Source of the DNA: Vitrella brassicaformis CCMP3155
Lineage: Eukaryota > Protista > Chromerida
Direction of reading: 5' to 3'
Length of the DNA stretch: 64,000 nt
NCBI GenBank assembly: GCA_001179505.1
Contig: CDMY01000475.1
Span: 5,487 to 69,486 of the forward strand
The notes below the pieces were generated by a model. That model was not told the origin of the DNA and did no database searches. It was given only the letters and a program-made list of their open reading frames with translations. Positions 26,530 to 41,684 of this stretch are shown here, piece after piece (position 1 is the first letter of the stretch; each line of letters starts with the position of its first letter). The translations under genes and the position numbers were made by a program.

Positions 26530-27302
26530 TCATATGGTGCGCCTCAGCACGGCCCTGGCCATGCGTCGCCTCCGCCCCCTGCCCTTGCCCTTGCCGCTGC
26601 CCCTGCCCCGCTCATTCTCTGATTTCAGCTTCTGCTCAAACACCAGCTGGGCTTGCCACACCCGGTCTGAGAATGCGCCAAGACCGCCGTTGTTGAGTCC
26701 GGCCGTCCTCGCCGCCCAGTGTGAGGGCCGGCACCAGTTGAGGACCGACGGCGCGGCCACCACACGGTCGTTGAGACCGAAAGGGATGAACGCAACTGAC
26801 GGCGATACGTCACATCACACACACACACGCACACACACACACACACGGATAAGTCCGCCTGCATGCCTTTAAAGGATAGGATTGCTGACTGGCAGTCGCT
26901 TCTTGGCTCACTCACCCGGTGCGCATCTCGAGAACGACGATATGCGATAGCCTGCAGCAACCAAGCACGGCAGTGATGGGTGGAGAACGGAAGACGGATA
27001 GACCGTCATCTCATCGTGCCGGCTTAGCCTCTTCCCCACGCACATCACATACCTCGGCTGCATCACACAGAAACACACAGAGGCATCATCCGGCAACAGA
27101 CAGTCACGCGATCATGATGCCCATTCTCCCGCCCTCCCTCCCTCCATCCGGCCATCCATCCATCCATCCATCCGTTCATTCACTCATTCGGATGTGCGTG
27201 CGCATACCTCAGCGTCACAATGCATCGGACGAGCGGAACGAGGTGATGAAGGCCGACGAGGAGGACTAACAGCAGCGCTGAGCGAGTTGCAAACACATCC
27301 AT
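26530..27302 (-). CDS. Small (133 aa) signal-peptide protein of unrecognised family, paralog 1; 4 exons including a 5-nt micro-exon
   Basis: Exons 27302-27208, 27057-27053, 26951-26916 and 26795-26530 give MDVFATRSALLLVLLVGLHHLVPLVRCIVTLSRGYRISSFSRCAPVAFIPFGLNDRVVAAPSVLNWCRP... All junctions are GT-AG. The model is supported by ungapped homology to 40627-41145. Confidence 0.8.
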
Positions 27303-27598
27303 ACATTCCATCCTGTGCATCGCATTCATCCCCCATTCCTTCTCCTTCGTTCGTACCTTTCCGCCATGGTATCACCACAGCGGCTCATTCTCGCGCCTCC
27401 ACCCATCTATCTACCATCAACGCCGTCAGATCTTGATAAGCTCGCAAATAACGACCGGGCGAAACCCTCGCTGCGGGCCAGGCGGTGTGGCCAGCTTCTC
27501 ATATAGCGGTCGTTTACCCCAACTCGCTGTTTTCGGTTTTCGTTAACCTCGCGGGGCTTACTTTCCCCTTCGACCCTCGGAGGGTGTGGTGCGCCAGG

Positions 27599-30500
27599 AT
27601 GCGTCGTGGTTCGCACCATCAGCATGATCTGTTGTCGCATGAGTACCACGAGGTGACATCTCCCGAGGCGCTGCAGCACCTCCACATCTACTGCAACGCA
27701 CTCACAAACGGACTCAAACACTTGTACACGCACGACTACACAGCTGGTAGGCTCGTGCTCGGATGGCGTCATCGCAGATCTCCCCTCCACCCATTGAAAT
27801 CCATGCGTGTGAGTGTGTGCAGCGTTGGCCTGTGTGGAGGAGGCCCAGGTGGCGGCTTATGGCCTCGGTGATGTCAAGAAGGCCGCAGCCATGGGCAAGT
27901 AAGCACCTGCAGGCAGACAGAGATAAAGGCGGATGTTTTCTCCGTCGCCCCTTCTGTCTGTGTGTCGGTGTGTCAGGTTGATGTCTGTGATATATGGCTA
28001 TAGCGGTTACGGCGGCCATGCGCGTGATGTTCTGACCGAGGTCATCGAGCAGACGGACGACCCCCTGCAGCAGACAGTCATGCTGGCGTCCCTGGCGGCC
28101 GTGGGGACCATCGAAGGCGACCTGCACACGGCACGACTGAGGCTGGAGCAGGTGAGCATCGCCTGGATGCGAAGGTCCTTTCTTCCACGTGTATGTGTAT
28201 GCCTGTTCATGTGCGTATGTATTCAGGCGTTGAAGATATCTCGGCAGGCTGGGAAGGTCCGTGAGCATATCGTGCACGTCCACACACACACGGTTCTTTT
28301 TGTGATGGGTGTCGTGTCATTGGCCAGCATCTGCTGTCGCATGCTGTGCGGAGCGGCGGTGCGGGCAGCCGACTCACGCACGAGATCGCACAGATGCCAC
28401 TTAGAGCCATCACCAAGTTAGCTTCCCACCCATCCCACCACAATGCCTGCCTCACTCTATGTGCTGTCTGTCTGTATGTCAGTGTGCTCTTCGGTGTCCC
28501 TGACATCCGCCTGGCCGTACAGGCGCTCCAGCAGCAAAAGAATGCATACAAGTCAGTACCCACTCTTGATAGATAGATAGATTGGTGGGCGGATTCACAT
28601 GTCATCCAAAGACACACGGGGGGGCGGGCTGACATTGCAGGTCAGTGAGCAGTGGCACGTCTTTGCGTCTATCGCTTGTGGAGGACCTGCTCGGCACCCT
28701 CACCCACCAGGCGGAGATGGCCCAGCGCAGCGACCACCCCCAGGGCCAACACACCACACACACCAAAGACGGAGACACATTCGGTGAGTCGGTGAGCCCG
28801 CCTCATGCACCATATCCACAACACAACACACCACAACACGTTCGTTATCTGCAGATGTCGACCGAGAGGAGGCGATGCAGCTGGCCCGTTCGCAGCGTCT
28901 GCGGTTCAACACTGAGCGACTCCACCTGCTCGCCACGGCGGCGGACACACCGGGGGCCGGACTCCGTGGCTGGGGGCCGGCAGCCCTCTTAGGCCTCACT
29001 GTGACCATCCTACAGTCACCCGAATCAGCCAGTGCAGCCAAGAACGAGCGGAAACGACTGGTGGGTACCCGACATGGCNNNNNNNNNNNNNNNNNNNNNN
29101 NNNNNNNNNNNNNNNNNNNNNNNNNNNNNNNNNNNNNNNNNNNNNNNNNNNNNNNNNNNNNNNNNNNNNNNNNNNNNNNNNNNNNNNNNNNNNNNNNNNN
29201 NNNNNNNNNNNNNNNNNNNNNNNNNNNNNNNNNNNNNNNNNNNNNNNNNNNNNNNNNNNNNNNNNNNNNNNNNNNNNNNNNNNNNNNNNNNNNNNNNNNN
29301 NNNNNNNNNNNNNNNNNNNNNNNNNNNNNNNNNNNNNNNNNNNNNNNNNNNNNNNNNNNNNNNNNNNNNNNNNNNNNNGGGGGGGGTTGGTGGGTGACCC
29401 ATGCAATGGCATGGAGGGAGGGAGGGAGGGACGGAGCAGAGCTGATGAGATGATATGCGTGTGTCCGTGCGGGTGCGGGTGCAGGAGGCCCAGGAGATGT
29501 TGGATTTCGTACGTTCGGTGGTGAAGGGCCACTACTCGGCCGAGACGGCGCCTAGGGGGAAGGGCCAGAAGGGCAGCACCAGCCCTGCTCCAGCGGCCTC
29601 GCTGGGTGACCTCACACAAGACAAACTCAGAGACCTGGTGCGCGGAACATAGCCAGACCATTCATCTCGCGTCCGAACTCTCTCTCACTCTGTGTGTGTG
29701 TGTGTGTGTGTCGCGCAGCTGCGTTGGTCTCAGATGGTTCAGACGTTCCTCAACATCATCGTGGCCTTCATCGAGAGTCCCCAGCACCAGCACCTCCCAT
29801 TCACCGCACAGTCGAGACAGAGCAGCAGCCTCTACGCATCCGTTCTCTCGGGCGAGGCCGACAAGGAGCGCGGCAGCGGCAGCGGCAGAGAGAGCCGGCC
29901 GGGCACCGCTGCTAGTGGTGCTGGTGCCGCCAGTGGTGGTGCAGAAGTCGCCATCGCTGCAGCAGACCCCCTGGCGGCCATCGGTGACACACACACACAC
30001 ACACACACAGAGACAGAGAGAGAGAGAGAGAGAGAGAGGGCACACACACAGGGAGAGAGGGAGAGAGAGCGTTTCTGTCCATCTGTCATCTCATCTGCGG
30101 TGCATCATCTTTCTGTTTGTCTTTGTCTTTGTCTGTGTGTGTTGTCAGCGTTGCGTTTGTGTCTGCGTGAGGGCCTGAAGGGTGTGCGGCACTACCGCAG
30201 CCACGTGATGGAGGCCACCAAGGCCGCTGGACAGACAGACGAGGCCGCCAAGCACCTAGCAGAGCTGGACAAGGTGAGAGAGAGAGAGAGAGAGAGAGAG
30301 AGGGACACGTTGATGCAGGCCTGTGCGTGTGTGCGTATGTGTTCAGGAGGTGGCGTTGTTAGAGTGGGCGTTGCAGCTGCTGCCGAAGCTCATCAAAGGA
30401 GGTGCAGGGGTAGGGGCCGCGGAAACAACAGCAATCGCAGCTGCAGCGATAACATGCCCCGCAACGCAAGAGCTCCAAGACAGGTCGGTGCCCAGGGAGG

Positions 30501-32664
30501 GGAAACACGTGTCCAAACGTCTCGTCTTGTGATGGGTCTGTGTGTGCGCCTAGGCTAAATGGGCTGGTGTGGGTGTCGAGCGAGCGCATTGCTAAGCACC
30601 TGGACCTGGCCAAGGCCCTCGTCAACCAAATGCTCAACCGCCTCAAGGCCATGCTAGAGAGATCACTCTACCGGTCCGTCCGTCCGTCCGTCAGTCAGCA
30701 CGTGGCCGGCGCATCCGTCGGATGCACTCACCTTTTGTGCCGTTGCTCGGTCTGTGTATCGACAAAGCAGTGTGGGGATATCCCGTTTGTGTGCTGCCGT
30801 GAGACAGAGGCGCCGCTACCAAGTGCGGTCGCTCGGGTGCCCACTGCAACTGGTGNNNNNNNNNNNNNNNNNNNNNNNNNNNNNNNNNNNNNNNNNNNNN
30901 NNNNNNNNNNNNNNNNNNNNNNNNNNNNNNNNNNNNNNNNNNNNNNNNNNNNNNNNNNNNNNNNNNNNNNNNNNNNNNNNNNNNNNNNNNNNNNNNNNNN
31001 NNNNNNNNNNNNNNNNNNNNNNNNNNNNNNNNNNNNNNNNNNNNNNNNNNNNNNNNNNNNNNNNNNNNNNNNNNNNNNNNNNNNNNNNNNNNNNNNNNNN
31101 NNNNNNNNNNNNNNNNNNNNNNNNNNNNNNNNNNNNNNNNNNNNNNNNNNNNNNNGGGGGGGGGTCGGTCCGTCTGTCTGTCTGTCTGTCTGTGTGGGGG
31201 AGACAGATGGGCAGCAGCCATCCATCCTGTCTGTCCTCTGTCGTGTATATCAGACGCATATAGCCGTTCACGCGTTGGAGGGGGGCTTCGAAGTGCTCAA
31301 GCTGCACAGCAGAACCAACGGAGTGGTCAGTCAGTCAGACAGACCAGTCCAGGAGCCTCCGTGTCTCTGTCTGTCTGTGTGCCTGCATCGGTCGGTCGTT
31401 TGGTCCATCCATCAGGCGCCACGCTATTTCCGTGTCGAAGACGGCTTTCTCTGGTGGGTAGGCACCACAAGACAGCCGCTCCAGACCTCTCGCAATGTGT
31501 CTGTCCATTCATTTGTCTGTCTGTCACTGACTGCAGTTGGAGCAAGCACCGTGAGTACCTGTTCCAGCAGCCCCACCACCACACCCCGTCCCTCCCCCGC
31601 CCCTCACACTCGCACTTCGAATACGATACCACCGACTTCCACAGATCCCTCTCGCACCCACACATCCACACCCACACCCACCAGCAGCAGCAGCCCTCAC
31701 ACCTCTCCCCATTCACTTCGGGCAGGGGCGACCACCCCCACACACACCCGCCCCATGACGTGGGAATGGCTGTGGGGCGCTGCGGTCCGGGTGCTGCCAA
31801 GGTAGTGCTTCCACGGCGGGTGTCTCTGCAGCAGGTCTGGGGGGTGCGCTATGGGCAGCGGAGCGACAACTTCAGGACGAAAAGCGCCGCCAAGGGATGT
31901 GCACCAGAGTGAGCATGCCAGTGCACTGACTGCAGAGAGAGGGAGGAGGCTACAGATGCAGCGGATGTGTGGGGCCGGGGGTTTGGGCTTCAGGTTGTGT
32001 TTGTCGATATTTCTGAAGCCACCGGGTGACACAGCCGGACAGGCCGGGCGGAAAGGTACACACAGACGTGTCGCATGGAGACAGCAGCGTGGTGTAAAGA
32101 TGGCTGCGTATGGACTGCAGGCAAGAAGGGCGACCCCCATCCGCAGCGGCAGTCCATCGATCTGATCTTCGCCACCTTCCCCAGCCTGTTCCTCTTTGTG
32201 TGCGGCCTGCAAGTGCTCACCAAGACCGTCAACCCACACATGAGCACACTGCCGCCAGGCAGACTGCTCTGGTGTGTACCACACAACACACTCGCAGCCC
32301 GGCTGGCCTTTGTATCTATCTGCTTGTCTCGTGTGTGTGTCTGTGTGCAGGTTGCGTGTGTGGTACTCTCTGTGTCGCAGCTACCCCCACCAGCCGTCGA
32401 TGTCGTTTGTCAAGGTGCTGCTGGCCAAACAGGCGGACATGCAGCACCACACCGCTGCCGCACTGGCGCGGGTGGCAGAGGGGGCAATATGATACGATAG
32501 ATAGCGGACCTTATACGGATGGATGCGTGAGCTTGTGTGTGTGTGTGTGTGTGATGAGGGTGTGGGAGTGGGGGTGCAAAGTGATATTGAACTTCAGCAA
32601 GAAGCTGCCTGCGGTGACGTACGTATTCATTGCATCTCAACGTGCACATAACATGGGCCACTGA
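27599..32664 (+). CDS. Large hypothetical protein with TPR-like helical N-terminus and C-terminal PH domain; spans two assembly gaps
   Basis: Helical exons (LASLAAVGTIEGDLHTARLRLEQALKISRQAG). PH-like strands APRYFRVEDGFLWW, VSLQQVWGVRYGQRSDNF and QSIDLIFATFPSLFLFVCGLQVL. Exon phases were only partly verified. Confidence 0.6.
29079..29378. other. Assembly gap (300 N)
   Basis: Run of n, followed by a G run. Confidence 1.
30856..31155. other. Assembly gap (300 N)
   Basis: Run of n, followed by a G run. Confidence 1.
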
Positions 32665-33296
32665 CTGCGTCATGATGACTATCACACACACGACACAATT
32701 TGTCCGTCAACCCCACCCGCCACTCTCACGACAAGTGTACCCGCCACTTGGGCCAGACTGTGTGAGAGGTCGTCAGCGTCTGCTACGACACAGCATCCCC
32801 TGCCACCAAGTGGGGCCGAGGGTGCGGTGACGAAGCAGACACCGACGAACTCTCACACCAGACCGCGTGCACACACAATACGGCAGCACCACACCACAAC
32901 AGGGGGACATCCATGCAGCAGCCAGGCGACAAGACGACCGACCCATCAATTCGTCAGGCTCGAGGAGGATCCATCCACCGGAAAACACAGCCATCAATCC
33001 ATCCATCGGCGCACACGACGCATCACACCACACCCCAGCACCGCCCGCCATGTCACGACAACACGGCAAGGCAGGTGGATCGAACAATGAATGCTCTCAA
33101 TAAGGGTATACACACACGCCACGCCCGGCTGGGAGGCATCCTCTCGTGTCCTCTTCTCTCGTCTCCTCTCGTCACACACACGACGGCCGGAAAAAACACA
33201 ACCAGATACATATACTGGAGGAAAAAGGACGCCATGCCGTGGCGTGTGGGCGGGAGTGAGGGAGTCGGTCGGTGCCTCTCTCTCACCAATGGGGGG

Positions 33297-33333
<37 letters not shown>

Positions 33334-33604
33334 GAGAGGCATTGTGATGTATCGGTGGCCACTGATTCTTTAAGGCAGGCAGCTAGGCGAGTGAGTGTTG
33401 ATATGCACACAGAGGGACAGACAGGATTGCGGATCATAGGAGGGGATATATGGCCGCGTCATCGGCCTGTCTGTGGGAAGAAAACACGAAACTGCTGACT
33501 GAATAAAAGGGGCAGGCAGGCAGGGCACCAGGCAGCTTCGTGATCGTCAATCACCGCCGCCCTTGTCTGTCCTCCGCCCGCGAGAAATCAAAGAAAAAGT
33601 TTAG

Positions 33605-36147
33605 CTACACGGTCAGCTCCCTGCACACACACACACACACACACGTGTGTGTGTAGGTCCCATCAACATCCCTCTCCCCTCCCTCCCTGCTGCGTACCCA
33701 CCCGTGCATTGGTCTCTTGGGGTCGTTGTAGTTGACCCAGTCGCCAGCAATGGGGGCGAAGAGCAGGTCCTTGGGCACGTTGAAGCCCTCGATGTACTCG
33801 CCCATGTGCTGGCCCGTCTGGGTGATGAGGCGGTCCTGCTCGGGGGGCAGCTCGCCCACCTCCTGGGGCGTCAGCAGAGAGTTGGCCACCAGCCAAGCCG
33901 CGTCCTTGTGCAGCAGCATGTGGCCGTACAGATCCAACAACGGCAGCAACACTGATATATATATGGATGGATGGATGGATGGATGGACGACACACACAGA
34001 CAGAGACAGACACGGGCAGGTGGTGTGTGGGAGTCGGGTTGGGGGTGCTGTGAATGGAATGGTACCTGGCTGCAGTTTGCGCATCTTGGTGTCGAAAACG
34101 ACGTCAGCGAAGGCCTCGAAGCACCGCTTCTCGGCAAAGGCCTCGGCGAGCTCCTGCACCAGTCGCGCCTCCTGCCGCATCCACACCTCGAAGATCTGTC
34201 CCGAGTTGCCGCCCGTCTTGAGCATCGACGCACCCAGCGCACGCCCCTTCATCACCTCTCGCTTCGCAAGCAGCCGCGACACCCTCACCGGCCCCTCACC
34301 GGCCCCGGTGTCTGCGAGCCCCTTTCGGTTCTTCCAGCCCTTCTGCACCCCGTCGAGCAGCTCCTTGGCCACCTTCTGCCACAGCACGCGGTTGTCCCCC
34401 TCCGCCGTGATGCCTGCGTGTGCGCCTGTGATGGCCTCGCCGAAGAGATTGCAGGCGAGGTAGCCCTGCCCCCCGCACCTCTCGCGGCAGATACTGGCGG
34501 TGCGCTCGGCGTGCCACGACATCATGGGTTTGATGGCGCAGCACAGCAGCAGCACCTCGTACCGCAGGGCGTCGATCTGGTCCTTGGGGGCGGCCTTGTC
34601 CTGCCGCAGAGCGTTCAGCTGCGCGTACTTGTGCTTGCACTCGGTCATGAAGAAGGTGAGGGCGTATGTGGCGGCGACGAGGGGCATGAGGGCCTGCTGC
34701 TGCAGCTGGTACTCGGCAATGGCCGTGTCGCTCTTGCCCGTGGGGCCCACGCACAGGCGGCTCTGGGAGTAGCGGACGGCGATCGTGAGGGCCAGTTTGG
34801 TCTGGCCGAGCATCATGGAGGCGATGCACAGACGGCCGCTCAGCAGCTGGTCAGCCTGGATCACGAAACGCTGACGGCGGCCCTGCACCGTGCTCTCGAA
34901 CTTGCCGCCCTTGTGAACCGTCGACACACGATCCAACAGGTGCTCACGGGGAATGCGCACCTGACCACACACACACAGACAGACACACACGCACAGATGG
35001 ACGGCCGGGTGCGGGGATGTGTGTGGCTGGTTGGTCGTCTCACGTACGTCTTGGAAGTGGAGTTTGGCGTTGTCGACGCCGTTGTTGCCTATCTTGAATC
35101 CCATGTCCTCGATGGTGACGCCCTCACACACCCGACGGTCATTGTGGCGGATGCGGACGAGGAAGGGGTGCACCCCCTGGCTCTCGCTGCTCAGGCTGGG
35201 GATAATCAGCTGCGCGAACACCACACACCAGTGGGCGTGCTGCGCCCCGTTGGTTATCCAGTACTTCTGGCTGTCAGCCACACACAAACACAGAGGGAGA
35301 GAGAGGGAGAGAGAGAGGGAAGGCTTTCTCGTCTTGTGTGTTGACTTTGTTTGTCGTGTGTTTGTGTGTTTGCCCACCTGAGTGGCGTGGGGCAGTTGAT
35401 GATGAACTCGTCTGTGTGTGGGTCGTACGTGGCCGTCGTCTGCATCTCCACCGCATTGTTGCCGAACCCCAACTCAGTCAACGCGAAACAACCCACCTGC
35501 ACACACACACACACACACACACACAGAGCCAAACAGACAGACACGCAGTCAGTCGTCGTACGACCCCCAGCCCCCAACACTACCAATGAATTGAATGCAC
35601 TGACTGACGCACCTGATCGAACGTGTCCACATCTGGTATGATGCCATGGTGTTTGTCGGTCCCCAGCTGCAGCAGCGTGCCGCCGAAGAGGTTGAACTGC
35701 ACCGTCAGCTTGGTGGCGGTGCCGGGGTCCCCCAGAATGCCCACTGCCTCGTGCACCGTGAAGACGTTCGCCGGGTTGCGGATGAAGTCCCACACAGACA
35801 CAACGCCGCCCTCACACAGCGTCTTGAGCCGCCTGTAGGCCAACTCTGACCGACCAGTCACCAACACACAACAGAAACACGGCAGGCACTGATTCCTTCC
35901 TCTCTGCCCTGAGGTGTTGTCTTGTGCTGTGCTTGCCTCTGTGGGCGGCGAGGGCGACGTTGAATCTTGGCGTGAAGAGGTCCCTGTGCTGGCGTGCGAT
36001 TCTGAAGATGCGCTGTCTGTTGTCGTGGTTGTCTGCGTCCATGAGGTGCTGCAGCTGCTCCATCACCTCCCTGTCCGACAAGGGGGATGACGCAGAGGCC
36101 GCAGGGCTGACGCTCACGTGAGCCGCAACTATCTCCAATCGATGCAT
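33605..36147 (-). CDS. ACX: Peroxisomal acyl-CoA oxidase with N-terminal PTS2
   Basis: Motifs [55 protein letters not shown] and [12 protein letters not shown]. Starts [11 protein letters not shown] (RLx5HV). Confidence 0.95.
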
Positions 36148-36311
36148 TATCCTCAAGCAACTCACAACTTGCCGACAACGAAAGAGGAGCAGCTAAGGGC
36201 AATCCCAACAATGCAAGAAGCTAAGCTCGCAGACGTGAGGCTCTCACGGGACTCAATCTCTCTCCTTACAGCGTGTAGGAGGCGGAGTGATTATCTATCA
36301 GGTGTCAGGTG
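36148..36311. promoter_or_regulatory. Probable bidirectional promoter (ACX / proB)
   Basis: Divergent ATGs only 164 bp apart. Confidence 0.5.
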
Positions 36312-39300
36312 ATGCAGACGAACGGCGACTGCGCTGCTGCACCTGAGTCGACTGGTGCTCCGGAGGTGACCACCGAAAACGATGGAGTGCAGACCATCGA
36401 AACCGGTCCGTCACACAGAACAGAACACCACAGCAAGCCATCCACGACACGACCAAGGCACCGCATGCAATGCAGCGCATCAGATCAGATTCCCTGACCT
36501 CGTGTGTTGGTGTCCGTCTGGTTGCGTGCGTTGTGTTGCAGGTCCTCGGGGCGAGATGCTCCTCAAGATCCGGACTGACGACGGCGCGGCGGACGAGATG
36601 GCCCGCACCCTCTCGCCCTTCGCCGAGCAGTTCCCCTCGTCGACGACTACGGAGGATCTGTTGATAGTCATCAAGGTGGGCACATCGACGCTGCTCGACT
36701 CGCGCAAGAACCGCCTGTCGCTCGCCAACGTGGGCCGACTGGTCGAACTCATATGCGACCTGCGACTCAAGGGGTTTCAGGTGAGGGAGGGATGGATGCA
36801 TGGATTGATGGAATGACAGACAGGTGATCTATCTGATCGAGGCTCTATCGGCTCTCTGGGCGTGGCGTCTGCTCTGCAGGTGGTGTTGGTGTCATCGGGT
36901 GCTGTGGGGCTTGGGTGCCATCACATGCGCATGAGTCGGCCGTCAACAGTCATCGGCAAGCAGGCTGCAGCCGCCATCGGCCAGGGCAGGCTCATGGTAC
37001 GGACGGACGGACGGACAGACATCTGGATGGATGGATGGATGGGCAGTGTGGATTGCATTCTGATTCATTCTGTGGTGAGTGTGTGTCGTCCATCAGCGGA
37101 TGTACGACGACGCCTTTGCGTACCACAACCAGAAGGTGGCGCAGCTGCTGCTGGCGAGGCAGTGGTTCCTCGAGAAGGAGAACTACGCCCAGTTCCAGGC
37201 CACACTATTCGGTCAGCCCAGCCACCAGTCAGCCAGGTCTCGCGCACGGAAACATGCAATAAGGCAGACAGACAGGTGACGGACGGTTGCTGTGCTGTGT
37301 GTGGCTTGTCTATCGTCAGAGTTGCTGCGTATGGGTGTGGTGCCGATTGTCAATGAGAACGACGCATTCACAAACGACCAGATCCGATTCGGCGTGAGTG
37401 CAGGAGAGGAGGGAGCATCGCGTCTGACTGATCTGTGTGCAGAATCAGATCTGATGTGACATGCCTGTGTCTGTCTGTCTGTCTGCCTGTCTGTGTGACT
37501 GATTGTGTGTCAGGACAACGACACCCTGGCTGCCTATCTTGCCGTCACCATATCGGCACACTGGTGGGTGAGCTGGGAATTCTCACTTGCGCATGACCCA
37601 ACGAGTGATTTGTCCTTATGTTGTGTTAGGTTGTTTCTGCTTACTGACGTGGACTGCCTGTACACGGCCAACCCCCGCAGCCACAGCGACGCCAAGCCCA
37701 TCCCCTATGTGGAGAACATCGACGACCTCCACCGACTCATGACGCAGGACGACAACGCCGGCACGGCATTCGGCACCGGCGGCATGCGCACCAAGATCCT
37801 GGCCGCCCGCATTGCTGTCGCCACCGGCATACACACGGGGCTCTGCAACGGACAAGAGCCCCAGTAGGGAACGCACGCACGAGCTGGCTGGCTGGCTGGC
37901 TGGATGGATGGATGGATCTTTCTTTCTGTTGCTCTGCATGATACACAGGCGGATTCTGGACATGTTGGATTTCGCCGAGGCCCGGGCCCGCCCCCCTTCG
38001 CCCCCTTACCTGATGCTTGAGAACAAAGGCGACCAGCAGCAGCAGCAGCAGCAGTTGGAGCTGCCCGAGTTCCGGCTGCAGGTCAATGGGGAGGACGTCA
38101 GCACTCCGCAACAGAGAGACCACACCGACCCGACTGAACAGGTAGGTGAGACACAGAGAGAGAGGGAGAGCAACCAACACGCACACCCACACCCACACAC
38201 ACACACCCTTGTATGTGAGTGCAGATGTACCCCAAGTTCCACATCGAGGCCTCCGGTGCCTTCCCGGCCCTCTCCGCCTCCCCCTGCCCCTCCCCCGCCC
38301 CTCAGGTCAACGGCTACGGCCCGACCGCTGCTGCCGACTATGGAGAAGGTGAGGATGGTCTGCCTGATGAGGAAGACGAGTCGCCTCAGCGTCGGTTGCG
38401 GCTGCGGCTGCTGACCTCACCCACCAGCCTGCAGCGCAACTACCCCTTCATGGGCACCATCTTCAGGGCAGCCGAATGCAGCCAGTCTATACGCCTCAGC
38501 AGGAGATGGATACTCACTCTCCCGGTGAGCTGGGCAGACACGCAGACAGGGGGAAGGGGGACAGCTGGAGGGAGGGATGGAGGGCCTTTGTGTGGGTTGT
38601 GTCGTGTGTGGGTCAGGTGTCTGGTACGATTTACATTGATGACGGTGCGGCCAAGGCGGTGCTGCTGCAGCACAAGTCGCTCCTCGCTGTGGGGGTCCAA
38701 AAAGTGGAGGTGTGCGCGTCTGTCTGTCTGCACACGTAGACGGCCGGCTGCAAGTGTGTGTGTGTGTGGATGCATTGCATGCCTGTTCTATACTGTCCAT
38801 CAATCAGGGTCGGTTCATATCGATGGAGTCGGTGGCGCTGCGGCGGTACGATGCGCCAGAGCTCGAGGGCGACCTGGCCAGATGCCTCACCAACTTTTCG
38901 GTACGTCCGTTGGTCGGTTCGGCATACACAGACAGCACAGGTGTGTGTGTGTCAACTCAACCATGTCTGTCGGTCTCCATGTGTGTGTGGTTAGAGTGAG
39001 GAGCTGGACAAGATCAAGGGCCTGAAGTCTGAGCACCACGCAGAGGTACTGGGGTACAGTTGCGGACCGGAGGTCGCATTCAGAGACGACATCATATTCG
39101 TAAGCATGGCACACAAACACGCCGAGGTGCGTGGTACATGACGCTTGTATGTGTGATGGATGGTGTGTTGGTCACTATCAGATGAACGTTGATCCGGTAG
39201 AGGAGATCGACCAGGGCGAGACGAGCATAACGGTGCCAACCAGCGTGTCGTCGCCAGCCGTCACCGAGGACATCCAGCACCACCACTCGCCCACGGATAA

Positions 39301-39340
39301 CTTGAAACTCATCGCAGCGGCCAAGACGGGCCGGGAGTGA
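36312..39340 (+). CDS. proB: Glutamate 5-kinase with C-terminal PUA domain
   Basis: Motifs IVIKVGTSTL, VVLVSSGAV, AAAAIGQGRLM, VVPIVNENDA, FGDNDTLAA, LLTDVDCLY and FGTGGMRTKILAA. PUA-like GTIYIDDGAAKAVLLQHKSLLAVGVQKVEGRF. Confidence 0.95.
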
Positions 39341-39652
39341 GGGGGTGCACCCCATCAACATGAACTACGTACGTCCGTCTATGTGTTGTGTGTAGCGTGC
39401 GTACGTACGTGTACTAACCGTGTGCACATGTGGGGCGAATCGTTCGTTTCTCGCGTTTCTATAGATATAGACAGACATACGGGTCATTCAATGACAGACA
39501 GACAGACATGCATGGCGAGGTTTGGTGCATAGCTTGTGGATCGATTTGTGGCGTGTTTTATATATGACGGCAGGCCGACAGACTACCGACGTCATGCATG
39601 ACGGGGACACACGTACGTACAGACAGACGTCGATGCATGTCGATGCATGCAT

Positions 39653-40522
39653 CTACTTCACCACAGTGAGTCCTGCCTCAGCCCCCCCTTGCCTGCAGTG
39701 CACTGCGGAGGGATTCCGGCTCCAACACTGCCCCGGGGGTGATGCCATGCTGCTTGAACCAACCTACAGGCATCTCTAGCCTGATCGATCATGTCATGCC
39801 CACAAAGGGACGTTGTTACGTGTGTGTCGGTGCCTGCACTGCTTATGCTTGCCCCATTTTAGCGTCGCTGCGGTCACTGTACACCCACGTCTCGTCATTG
39901 GCCTTAAGGTGGTGGATCTGCACACACACACACACACACACGCACACTCACAGGCAATTCGGCCGTGTGTCCTTTTGCATCCGTTTACGGTCTTCCCTCC
40001 TCCCTCTGCATACAAACGTACATCAGTGAGCACTCCCGCGGTATCGAAGAAGCCAGCGTCGAGGTCGAGGGGCGTGTCCTTCATCCTGCAACCCAACCAG
40101 TGCAAAACAAAGAAAAACGACGTGTGGCGCGCCGCGCCCACGAATGGTCCGATGTGTTGACGCACACCCACCAGAAGACGCCCCGTCTTGGCCGGCTGTA
40201 GACGAACAGCATACCCGTATTTTCGCCCAGACTCTGCCGCCCCATCAATCCCTCCTGATGCTCCCCATCACTGACGGCGATCTGCCGAAGGGGAAAAGTA
40301 ATGTCATGCCACTCTGTCGTGTGATGCGTACAGACCTGGAGAATGTCATCCATATCTCTCTCCATTGCAATCACTGACCTGCACATGGATTGCGGCGCCT
40401 GAGAGGACAAGAGGGAAACGGCTGGCGAAGGTGGCCGGCTGCCGGTGCACCCGAGCAGACGACAGCGCCCTGGTGTGGCACAGAAAGACCCAGAGGAGGG
40501 AAAAGAGACCGCCAAACCTCAT
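39653..40522 (-). CDS. DUF192 (UPF0127) family protein with signal peptide
   Basis: MRFGGLFSLLWVFLCHTRA leader. IHVQ|IAVSDGEHQEGLMGRQSLGENTGMLFVY...FW|MKDTPLDLDAGFFD...KMG|LEMPVGWFKQHGITPG; the last junction needs the GC-AG intron 39781-39852. Confidence 0.88.
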
Positions 40523-40626
40523 CTGATGGATCGTCATGTAAACACAGCGGCACTGATCATCTGCGACTCCCTCTCGGGCGCATCTGTGACCTTCTGTTCT
40601 GCAGAAGAAGAACATGTCGGGGGTGC
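40523..40626. promoter_or_regulatory. Probable bidirectional promoter or overlapping 5' UTRs (DUF192 / small protein paralog 2)
   Basis: Divergent predicted ATGs 104 bp apart. Confidence 0.4.
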
Positions 40627-41145
40627 ATGAGAGGAGGTCTTCATCCACCATCATCTCGTTCCGTAGCCTTCGGCCTCATCGTTTTCTTTCTCCTCGTTCG
40701 CGTGTCCACTGGCGGCTCTGGCTCGCTGGTGGTGCTGAGCCGTGGTCACCGCAATGGATCCAGCCTCCGATGCGCACCAAACGCCCTGCTGGTGAGTACG
40801 TCACACACACCAATAACACCACTATGAGCGATCTCGAGTCCGTTCCGTGTGCGTTGCATTGCCTTGCAGCCGTTCCTGGTCAATGACAGAGCGGTGAGTG
40901 GGCCAATCGTCTTCAACTGGTGCAGACCGACCAACTACCCCTCTCGCCTGGCGACCTTCACCGGCGGCGGGATCGGCACCTATGTGGGCCGCATCTGGCA
41001 GCGGCAGATCATCGAGATGCGCCGCGAGAGGACCACCGAGGAAGAAGAGCGGGAGGAGAGGCGCAGACAGGCTGAGCAGAGGAGACGGCAGGGCGGCTCG
41101 CGCCGGCAGCTGTTGCTGCGCATGTTTCGGAGAGGGAAGGTGTGA
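40627..41145 (+). CDS. Small (146 aa) signal-peptide protein of unrecognised family, paralog 2; 2 exons
   Basis: Exons 40627-40791 and 40870-41145 give MRGGLHPPSSRSVAFGLIVFFLLVRVSTGGSGSLVVLSRGHRNGSSLRCAPNALLPFLVNDRAVSGPIVFNWCRP... Homologous to 26530-27302. Confidence 0.8.
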
Positions 41146-41684
41146 GGGCATGGGCGGCGAGTGTCCTCCCTACCTGTGGCTCTTTGCTTCTCACGTGCGA
41201 GTGTGTCGATTTCTCGTGTCTAGGAAGCAATTTTCTCGGAGGCGTGGGTTGGGCCACAGAAAACTAAGGAGTGGTCGTGAGTGACGTGACACTGTGTGTG
41301 GATATATTCTTGTTGTCACCGGAAGGACAGGTTGTACGCGCAGCTCATTAAATGCAGGAAGGATGCAAACGAGAAGCATCAAAGTGTCGCACTCCATTCC
41401 CTAACTAACTGCATGCCAACTGATGTCGCACTGCAGTGCTCAAAAAAGGTCAGTCAGCGTCCATCACATCGACAACAAACGCGCACTGCGGCGCACAGCA
41501 GAGGGAGGCTGAATCAATCGCCCGTCGATAAAAGCGAAAAGGGGTGCAGTGACTGACATTGATATTATGAGTACAGGACATCACAGGACAGCACAGCAAC
41601 AGACGGACAATCCCACCTCTCTCTTGCCTTACGTATACACGCACCCATCCATTCACCCACCAGCCCACCAACACATTCATCCAT

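What the first reader, a model, noticed from the sequence alone, without database searches (positions are those of the whole stretch)
26530..41145. Unrecognised family of small signal-peptide proteins: two paralogs 14 kb apart on opposite strands
Seen: 26530-27302(-) and 40627-41145(+) align without gaps over 68 aa, with 34 identities by hand count (IVTLSRGYRISSFSRCAPVAFIPFGLNDRVVAAPSVLNWCRPSHWAARTAGLNNGGLGAFSDRVWQAQ vs LVVLSRGHRNGSSLRCAPNALLPFLVNDRAVSGPIVFNWCRPTNYPSRLATFTGGGIGTYVGRIWQRQ). Both have a hydrophobic N-terminal signal, two invariant Cys (RCAP, NWCRP), a GGxG turn and a highly charged Arg-rich tail. The DNA is too diverged to look like a repeat and the intron positions differ, so the conservation is at protein level. 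Neither appears whole in the ORF track. Inference: an old, selected family of secreted or plastid-lumen micro-proteins (disulfide-stabilised core with polycationic tail; wall, adhesion, antimicrobial or signalling roles are possible).
Basis: partly seen in the sequence, partly recalled or inferred. Interest (0 to 1): 0.8.

Follow-up and report, generated by a model that had tools for sequence, protein, structure and literature searches.

The report
Vitrella-only family of small signal-bearing proteins
The two small genes are real paralogs in a five-gene family found only in the alga Vitrella brassicaformis; the proteins have a signal-like start, a conserved 68-residue core and a long positively charged helix, and they are an ordinary lineage-specific orphan family of unknown function.

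Summary
Genes A (26530-27302, minus strand) and B (40627-41145, plus strand) align without gaps over 68 residues with 34 identities. Their last exons alone give BLASTP E=1e-18, and there is no DNA-level similarity. Both assembly gaps lie between the genes, not inside them.

The genome is Vitrella brassicaformis CCMP3155. It holds five members: A and B here, and C, D and E on other scaffolds. A profile search of 1.84 billion protein representatives found only these Vitrella proteins plus one spurious repeat protein. Pfam, PDB, the ESM Atlas and a JGI metagenome scan gave nothing.

B versus C has dN/dS of about 0.16, with DNA similarity confined to exons and two 3'UTR blocks, so the family is under selection. 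All five start with a hydrophobic segment ending in small residues just before the core. Four of five carry an NxS sequon. The tails have net charge +7 to +12 and fold as one long helix in AlphaFold2. The core gets no confident fold.

The first "invariant" Cys is Gly in C, and nothing supports a plastid-lumen location. Gene A needs a 5-nt microexon that the public annotation lacks. D is transcribed but frame-broken. No transcript was found for A or B. Function is unknown; a secretory-pathway protein is the best guess. Interest is low.

The parts
27208..27302 (-). Gene A exon 1. It encodes a hydrophobic N-terminus (MDVFATRSALLLVLLVGLHHLVPLVRC) followed by IVTL. In-frame ATGs also lie at 27311, 27320 and 27329. 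The donor is GAG|GTATGC.
   Evidence: reading frame supported by the match of (I)VTL to C's LVTL and B's LVVL
27053..27057 (-). Gene A 5-nt microexon CCGAG (acceptor CAG|, donor |GTATGT). It restores the frame and supplies Ser-Arg-Gly of the family motif L-S-R-G.
   Evidence: It is the only frame-restoring AG|..|GT segment in the 256-nt interval, and it encodes exactly S-R-G. It is not used in the public model P0002. No transcript evidence.
26916..26951 (-). Gene A exon 3, encoding (G)YRISSFSRCAP.
   Evidence: also part of public model P0002
26530..26795 (-). Gene A last exon: the second half of the core (AFIPFGLNDR..NWCRP..GGLG..RVWQAQ), then a basic tail (net charge +11) and the TGA stop.
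40627..40791 (+). Gene B exon 1: a signal-like N-terminus (h-region SVAFGLIVFFLLV, c-region STG) and the first half of the core (LVVLSRGHRNGSSLRCAPNALL). The donor is CTG|GTGAGT.
   Evidence: equals residues 1-55 of P0001
40870..41145 (+). Gene B exon 2: the second half of the core (PFLVNDR..NWCRP..GGGIG..RIWQRQ), then an Arg/Glu-rich tail (net charge +7) and the stop.
   Evidence: residues 90-142 form one helix, pLDDT 81-97
41146..41345 (+). Gene B 3' flank, with two blocks shared with paralog C (GCGAGTGTRTCGRTTTCT, and GGTGAGTGACRTGAC...TATTCTTGTTGTCA).
   Evidence: meaning unknown
29079..29378 (.). Assembly gap (300 N) between the two genes, inside neither.
30856..31155 (.). Assembly gap (300 N) between the two genes, inside neither.

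Best explanation
A and B are two of five paralogous genes (A-E) of a family restricted to Vitrella brassicaformis and its close relatives.

Each gene encodes a protein of about 130-185 residues in three parts:
1. An N-terminal hydrophobic segment ending in small residues (STG, SVG, AHA, VCG, VRC).
2. A conserved core of about 68 residues that starts right after it: L-x-x-L-S/N-R-G-H/Y/F-R-N-x-S ... C-x-P ... N-D-R ... P ... W-C-R-P/A ... G-G-x-G-x-F/Y-x-x-R-x-W-Q-x-Q.
3. A 40-45-residue Arg/Glu-rich C-terminal helix with net charge +7 to +12 and an Arg-rich end.

Shown here: the family is real, is under purifying selection, and has no detectable relative or known domain.

Inferred: the N-terminus is a cleaved signal peptide, so the proteins enter the ER. 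There the conserved Asn-x-Ser could be glycosylated and the two Cys (where both are present) could pair. The mature protein of about 110 residues would then be secreted or stored in a secretory compartment, where the polycationic helix would bind an anionic partner such as wall polymer, membrane surface or polyphosphate.

The confidence figure is for the whole statement. That the family is real and Vitrella-only I put at about 0.9. The secretory route I put at about 0.55. The binding role is a guess.
For: - Paralogy: BLASTP E=1e-18 for the last exons alone. Own-genome searches find five loci and no more.
- Gene models: homology-guided exon models have canonical GT-AG introns. The public model of E (P0006) equals my exon model exactly, and B equals P0001.
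- Selection: B versus C has dN/dS 0.16 at dS 1.1, in core and tail alike. B/C DNA similarity is limited to exons plus 3'UTR blocks. D compared with its metagenome ortholog has no indels in 330 coding bases, against indels in the introns and flanks.
- Restriction to Vitrella: the HMMER profile against 1.84 billion representatives finds only A-E plus one spurious repeat protein. The word search finds only Vitrella and one ENA relative. The JGI metagenome scan is blank.
- No known domain: Pfam; PDB; Atlas.
- Signal-like start: the maximum Kyte-Doolittle score over 11 residues is 2.6-3.6 in all five. UniRef names B 'Secreted protein'.
- An NxS sequon is present in B, C, D and E.
- AlphaFold2 gives an N-terminal helix and a long C-terminal helix with pLDDT 81-97 in both B and E.
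Against: - No signal-peptide predictor was available. C and E (if E starts at its second Met) have no positive n-region, and D and E have hydrophobic stretches of 22-28 residues, closer to a membrane anchor.
- Long Arg/Glu-rich single helices are more typical of cytosolic or nuclear proteins than of secreted ones (general knowledge).
- One Cys is not conserved (C).
- No transcript or transcript-derived ORF for A, B, C or E was found.
- The public models of A and C lack the signal.
- D's real mRNA separates the signal half and the tail half into different frames.
- The core has no confident predicted fold.
Confidence: 0.5

Rival explanations
1. The hydrophobic N-terminus is an uncleaved signal anchor (N-terminus out, C-terminus in the cytosol). 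The proteins would be small, N-terminally anchored membrane proteins of the ER or another organelle. Their conserved core and polybasic helix would face the cytosol and bind acidic lipids, RNA or ribosomes, or another cytosolic partner.
For: - Positive charge is massively concentrated C-terminal of the hydrophobic segment (net +7 to +12 in the tail alone), and the n-region has charge 0 in A and C, and in E from its second Met.
- D and E have apolar stretches of 22-28 residues.
- The tail is predicted as a long Arg/Glu-rich helix, a feature common in cytosolic proteins (general knowledge).
- One Cys is dispensable.
Against: - A, B and C have h-regions of only 11-13 residues followed by small residues at -3 and -1, the pattern of cleaved signals.
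- The conserved NxS sequon in 4 of 5 members would be useless in the cytosol.
- UniRef's automatic name for B is 'Secreted protein'.
Confidence: 0.25
2. The family is decaying. The copies are transcribed or silent relics that no longer make the full protein, and the conservation seen reflects past selection.
For: - D's mRNA is frame-broken: ORF 506-877 and ORF 826-1110 of L034 are in different frames.
- The public models of A and C lack the signal and part of the core.
- No transcript-derived ORFs were found for A, B, C or E.
- By my hand count on the D versus metagenome-ortholog alignment, the two downstream exons carry about four amino-acid changes against two silent ones.
- Earlier notes of this scan report other frame-broken transcribed genes in this genome.
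Against: - B and E have intact ORFs with canonical introns, and both are annotated whole.
- A, B and C have intact homology-guided ORFs.
- B versus C has dN/dS 0.16 at dS of about 1.1, which means long-standing purifying selection on at least one of the two.
- A's frame is restored by the single possible microexon, which encodes the family motif.
- D's ortholog in a relative is in frame.
Confidence: 0.1
3. The core is a very diverged member of a known domain family that sequence methods and shallow-alignment structure prediction missed.
For: - Only five sequences were available for the profile and for AlphaFold2, so sensitivity is limited.
- The ESM Atlas feature search reports that relatives may be missed.
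Against: - Pfam at E<=10 gives only inconsistent sub-threshold matches to the charged tail or to the signal region.
- PDB phmmer is blank.
- The exhaustive HMMER profile search is blank outside Vitrella.
Confidence: 0.07

Closest known systems
Lineage-restricted small secreted proteins of alveolates, such as apicomplexan dense-granule (GRA-type) proteins (comparison from general knowledge, not tested as homology)
   Same: Small size; a hydrophobic N-terminal signal; no homologs outside a narrow lineage; a small paralogous family; predicted helices rather than a recognisable globular domain.
   Different: No sequence similarity. Vitrella is free-living. No localisation data. A long Arg/Glu-rich polycationic helix is not a defining feature of those proteins.
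Other orphan secreted families of Vitrella noted by this scan (six-cysteine peptide precursors: s1-197180, s1-201706, s1-242738)
   Same: Same genome; small spliced genes; signal-like starts; Vitrella-only; several dispersed or paired copies.
   Different: Those families are built on six-cysteine modules. This one has at most two Cys (one of them dispensable), a non-Cys conserved core and a long charged helix. I did not compare the sequences directly.
ER/K-type single alpha-helix or charged coiled-coil segments (general knowledge)
   Same: The C-terminal 40-50 residues alternate Arg/Lys with Glu and are predicted as one uninterrupted helix with high confidence.
   Different: The tails here are strongly net positive (+7 to +12), not balanced, and sit behind a signal-like N-terminus. 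This is a resemblance in composition and predicted shape only.
Cysteine-stabilised secreted peptides (defensin-like)
   Same: A signal-like start, small size and a cationic character.
   Different: Only two Cys, about 24 residues apart, the first absent in paralog C. No Cys framework and no confident compact fold.

Membership tests
Any Pfam-A family | The whole-protein score reaches the family's gathering cut-off. | tested here: not met
   The best matches are 8.9-14.9 bits against cut-offs of 23-35, each on the charged tail or the signal region, and none is shared between paralogs.
Eukaryotic cleaved signal peptide (secretory protein) | An n-region, a hydrophobic h-region of about 7-15 residues, and a c-region with small uncharged residues at -3 and -1. 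| tested here: inconclusive
   Hand analysis only. A, B and C have h-regions of 11-13 residues, followed by VRC, STG and SVG. D and E have stretches of 22-28 residues ending in AHA and VCG. The n-region is positive only in B, in D (MRRG) and in the annotated E. No SignalP was available. UniRef names B 'Secreted protein'.
Chromerid plastid-targeted protein (bipartite leader) | A signal peptide followed by a poorly conserved transit-peptide-like stretch, often starting with Phe (general knowledge). | tested here: not met
   In A-D the conserved core L-x-x-L-S-R-G begins 1-5 residues after the predicted cleavage site. There is no Phe at +1. E has a Gly-rich spacer, not a Ser/Thr-rich basic transit peptide.
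Cysteine-stabilised secreted peptides | A conserved framework of four or more Cys forming disulfides. | tested here: not met
   There are two core Cys at most, and the first is Gly in paralog C. The AlphaFold2 core has pLDDT below 50, so no geometry can be read.
Single alpha-helix / charged helix segment | A long uninterrupted helix of alternating acidic and basic residues. | tested here: met
   AlphaFold2 predicts helix 90-142 in B (pLDDT 81-97) and helix 142-178 in E (pLDDT 84-97). This is a prediction only.
Transposable-element or repeat-borne ORF | Copies share DNA similarity that extends beyond the ORF into the flanks. | tested here: not met
   All-against-all blastn of the five loci finds no similarity except the B/C exons and 3'UTR blocks. 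Intron positions differ between copies.

The most novel reading that the evidence does not exclude
The conserved 68-residue core is a new fold or binding motif. The family would then be a Vitrella-specific class of secreted polycationic proteins with a defined role, for example in building the sporangium or cell wall, or in antimicrobial defence in the coral-associated niche. A alone would depend on one of the shortest functional microexons (5 nt).
Probability: 0.12. Interest if true: 0.45.

Novelty: new member of a known kind. Interest (0 to 1): 0.2.

Why it matters
The direct value is modest. The finding defines a five-gene, species-restricted family that the public annotation lists only as unnamed or uncharacterised proteins (UniRef auto-names B 'Secreted protein'). 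It suggests corrected gene models for two members: A, by a 5-nt microexon, and C, by its signal exon. It shows that one member (D) is transcribed but frame-broken. Chromerids are the free-living sister lineage of apicomplexan parasites, so catalogues of their lineage-specific secretory proteins help in asking which secretory inventions came before parasitism. This family, however, has no counterpart in parasites, and this scan has already found several other orphan signal-bearing families in Vitrella.

Tried and rejected
- Pfam on exon translations and on the public proteins: nothing consistent.
- PDB sequence search: nothing.
- Word-based protein search with B's exon and with a family alignment: only Vitrella proteins, MMETSP ORFs of D, and one ENA relative.
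- Exhaustive HMMER profile search: one extra hit, a 920-residue 'fibroin heavy chain-like' protein of the European hare. I rejected it as spurious because a single weak 29-residue match (pairwise E 0.003) is summed over eight identical repeats.
- Weak own-genome hits at C198 and C462: inspected and rejected.
- AlphaFold2 of B and E: the core is unresolved. I therefore ran no fold search, because a low-confidence model plus a single long helix gives meaningless matches.
- Transcript look-ups for A, B, C and E by exact product: none on record.
- A -1 frameshift signal at D's frame break, by eye: no canonical slippery heptamer in the right frame.
- Literature: no paper on this family; the search for the ENA sample id was blank.
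- All searches used exon references or proteins returned by the databases.
Full report
**Source and gaps.** The window is G000:C475:5487-69486 of a 72.7-Mb, 1064-scaffold assembly. The proteins it encodes are deposited as Vitrella brassicaformis CCMP3155, which matches the assembly described by Woo et al. 2015 (PMC4501334). The only N runs are at 29079-29378 and 30856-31155. All exons of gene A (26530-27329) lie left of the first gap, and all exons of gene B (40627-41145) lie right of the second. Neither gene model crosses unread sequence. Only the spacing and relative orientation of the two genes depend on the scaffold joins.

**The observation.** The last exons alone give BLASTP E=1e-18. blastn with 7-base words finds no DNA similarity between the loci. 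For the A/B last-exon core, the proportion of synonymous differences (pS) is 0.69, which is saturated, and dN is 0.49.

B has two exons (40627-40791 and 40870-41145) and is identical to the public protein CEM15974.1 / A0A0G4FPN7 (P0001, 146 aa), which UniRef calls 'Secreted protein'.

A has four coding pieces:
- 27302-27208
- a 5-nt microexon, 27057-27053 (CCGAG)
- 26951-26916
- 26795-26530

**The microexon in A.** It therefore has no signal and no L-S-R-G.

I enumerated every AG|...|GT segment of up to 35 nt in the 256-nt interval that restores the frame without a stop. There is exactly one, and it encodes Ser-Arg-Gly, the motif that every clear paralog has at that place; E has Asn-Arg-Gly. 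Given one candidate, the chance of those three residues is about 0.01 by my estimate.

The public annotation used Augustus with TopHat2 intron hints (PMC4501334). That such a pipeline would miss a 5-nt exon is my inference.

**The family.** Six-frame searches of the whole assembly with each last exon and with a family profile find five loci and no more:
- A and B in this window.
- C on C182 (L004:1329-1454, 1501-1562, 1633-1834).
- D on C392 (L006, minus strand).
- E on C906 (L007, minus strand).

The public model of E (P0006, 184 aa) equals my exon-by-exon model exactly. The public model of C (P0003, 204 aa) replaces the signal exon and PLLVNDR with unrelated sequence and is probably wrong.

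B and C are closest (61% identity over the columns shared by all five), and A and D come next at 43%. The window therefore holds one member of each of these two closest pairs.

Shared features of the family:
- A hydrophobic N-terminus, with maximum Kyte-Doolittle score over 11 residues of 2.6-3.6.
- The core motif L-x-x-L-S/N-R-G-H/Y/F-R-N-x-S ... C-x-P ... N-D-R ... P ... W-C-R-P/A ... G-G-x-G-x-F/Y ... R-x-W-Q-x-Q. E lacks the W-Q-x-Q.
- A 39-45-residue tail with 14-20 Arg+Lys against 3-9 Asp+Glu.

The first Cys is Gly in C. The Asn-x-Ser sequon is present in B, C, D and E but not in A.

Intron positions:
- The phase-0 intron before P-F/L-L-V-N-D-R is shared by B, C, D and E.
- A's intron lies 11 bases upstream of that position.
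- D and E share a phase-2 intron nine codons after the W of W-C-R.
- C has its intron four codons upstream of that one.

**Selection.** B versus C gives dN/dS 0.16 at dS 1.1, the same in core and tail. B/C DNA similarity is confined to the three exons and two 3'UTR blocks. D has an ortholog on a 4-kb ENA metagenome contig (L033, sample ERZ893784) that is about 90% identical over 2 kb. In that comparison the coding pieces are 97-100% identical with no indels, while the introns and flanks are 90-96% identical with indels.

**Distribution.**
- The profile of the five members against 1.84 billion representative proteins returned the Vitrella proteins and one 920-residue repeat protein of a hare. 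I discard that hit because one weak 29-residue match is counted eight times.
- The word-based search of 5.8 billion clusters returned only Vitrella entries: two MMETSP ORFs of D (P0004, and a transcript ORF identical to P0008) and the ENA relative.
- A pattern scan of JGI metagenomes confirmed nothing.
- Pfam, PDB and the ESM Atlas gave nothing usable.

The family is, as far as these data reach, confined to Vitrella and a very close relative.

**Structure.** AlphaFold2 run on the nine-row family alignment gives the same picture for B and E. There is an N-terminal hydrophobic helix. The first two thirds of the core have pLDDT below 50. A short helix follows W-C-R-P, and then one long helix starts at G-x-F/Y-x-x-R and runs through the tail with pLDDT 81-97. 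No disulfide geometry can be read, and I ran no fold search on such models.

**Expression.** Exact-product look-ups found no transcript contig for A, B, C or E.

D is transcribed. A Logan assembly of run ERR558152 (L034) is 100% identical to the genome, and it confirms three of D's introns, including the two I had predicted from homology. But that mRNA keeps the 155-nt stretch between R-V-C-A-P and A-L-A-I-N-D-R as exon. As a result, the signal plus the first half of the core (ORF 506-877) and the second half plus the tail (ORF 826-1110, equal to the public 94-aa P0008 and an MMETSP ORF) are in different frames. In the metagenome relative the same stretch is in frame, but its amino-acid sequence there is unrelated to D's. 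D in CCMP3155 is thus a transcribed, frame-broken copy.

**Mechanism.** What is shown is a selected, lineage-restricted family with a three-part architecture.

My preferred reading, at about 0.55, is a cleaved signal peptide and passage through the ER, ending in secretion or storage, with the polycationic helix as the part that sticks to an anionic partner. The points in favour are:
- the short h-regions and small -3/-1 residues of A, B and C;
- the core starting immediately after the predicted cleavage site;
- the conserved sequon;
- the automatic 'Secreted protein' label.

The main rival, at about 0.25, is an uncleaved N-terminal anchor with the core and helix in the cytosol. It is favoured by the strong positive charge on the C-terminal side, by the long apolar stretches of D and E, and by the cytosolic flavour of Arg/Glu helices. 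Decay of the family (0.1) and a missed known domain (0.07) remain possible. Plastid-lumen targeting has no support.

**Verdict.** It is, however, an ordinary kind of thing: a small orphan family of signal-bearing proteins in a genome where this scan has already found several such families. The disulfide-core idea is weakened, and the functional proposals are untested.

Noticed in passing
L006 (G000:C392:66140-69211, minus strand) and L034 (Logan ERR558152 contig): Paralog D is transcribed, but its mRNA puts the signal plus first half of the core (ORF 506-877 of L034) and the second half plus tail (ORF 826-1110) in different frames. The ortholog on metagenome contig L033 is in frame. This is another transcribed frame-broken Vitrella gene, like those in earlier notes s1-215994 and s1-226939.
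   Followed up: yes
window 26916-27367 (-); L004:1329-1562: The public gene models of A (CEM15968.1) and C (CEL93661.1) lack the signal exon and part of the conserved core that homology with B, D and E predicts. They are probably mis-predicted: in A through a missed 5-nt microexon, in C through a wrong upstream structure.
   Followed up: partly
window 41146-41345 and L004:1835-2040: B and C share two conserved blocks in their 3' flanks: about 18 nt some 50 nt after the stop, and about 45 nt some 130-190 nt after the stop, the latter containing GGTGAGTGAC and TATTCTTGTTGTCA. A has a similar CGTGAGCGAC further downstream of its stop. This may be a shared 3'UTR element or a UTR intron.
   Followed up: no
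window 33605-35377 (-): A long ORF between the two genes matches acyl-CoA oxidase and acyl-CoA dehydrogenase domains (PF22924 at E=2.9e-34). It is unrelated to the family.
   Followed up: no
L033 (ENA ERZ893784, k147_2978959, 4061 nt): A metagenome contig about 90% identical over 2 kb to the Vitrella D locus. A close relative of V. brassicaformis is therefore present in that environmental sample and could supply orthologs.
   Followed up: partly
window 27130-27200 and 26810-26840; L006 and L007 flanks: (GGAT)n and (GT)n microsatellites sit inside or next to the introns of several family members.
   Followed up: no
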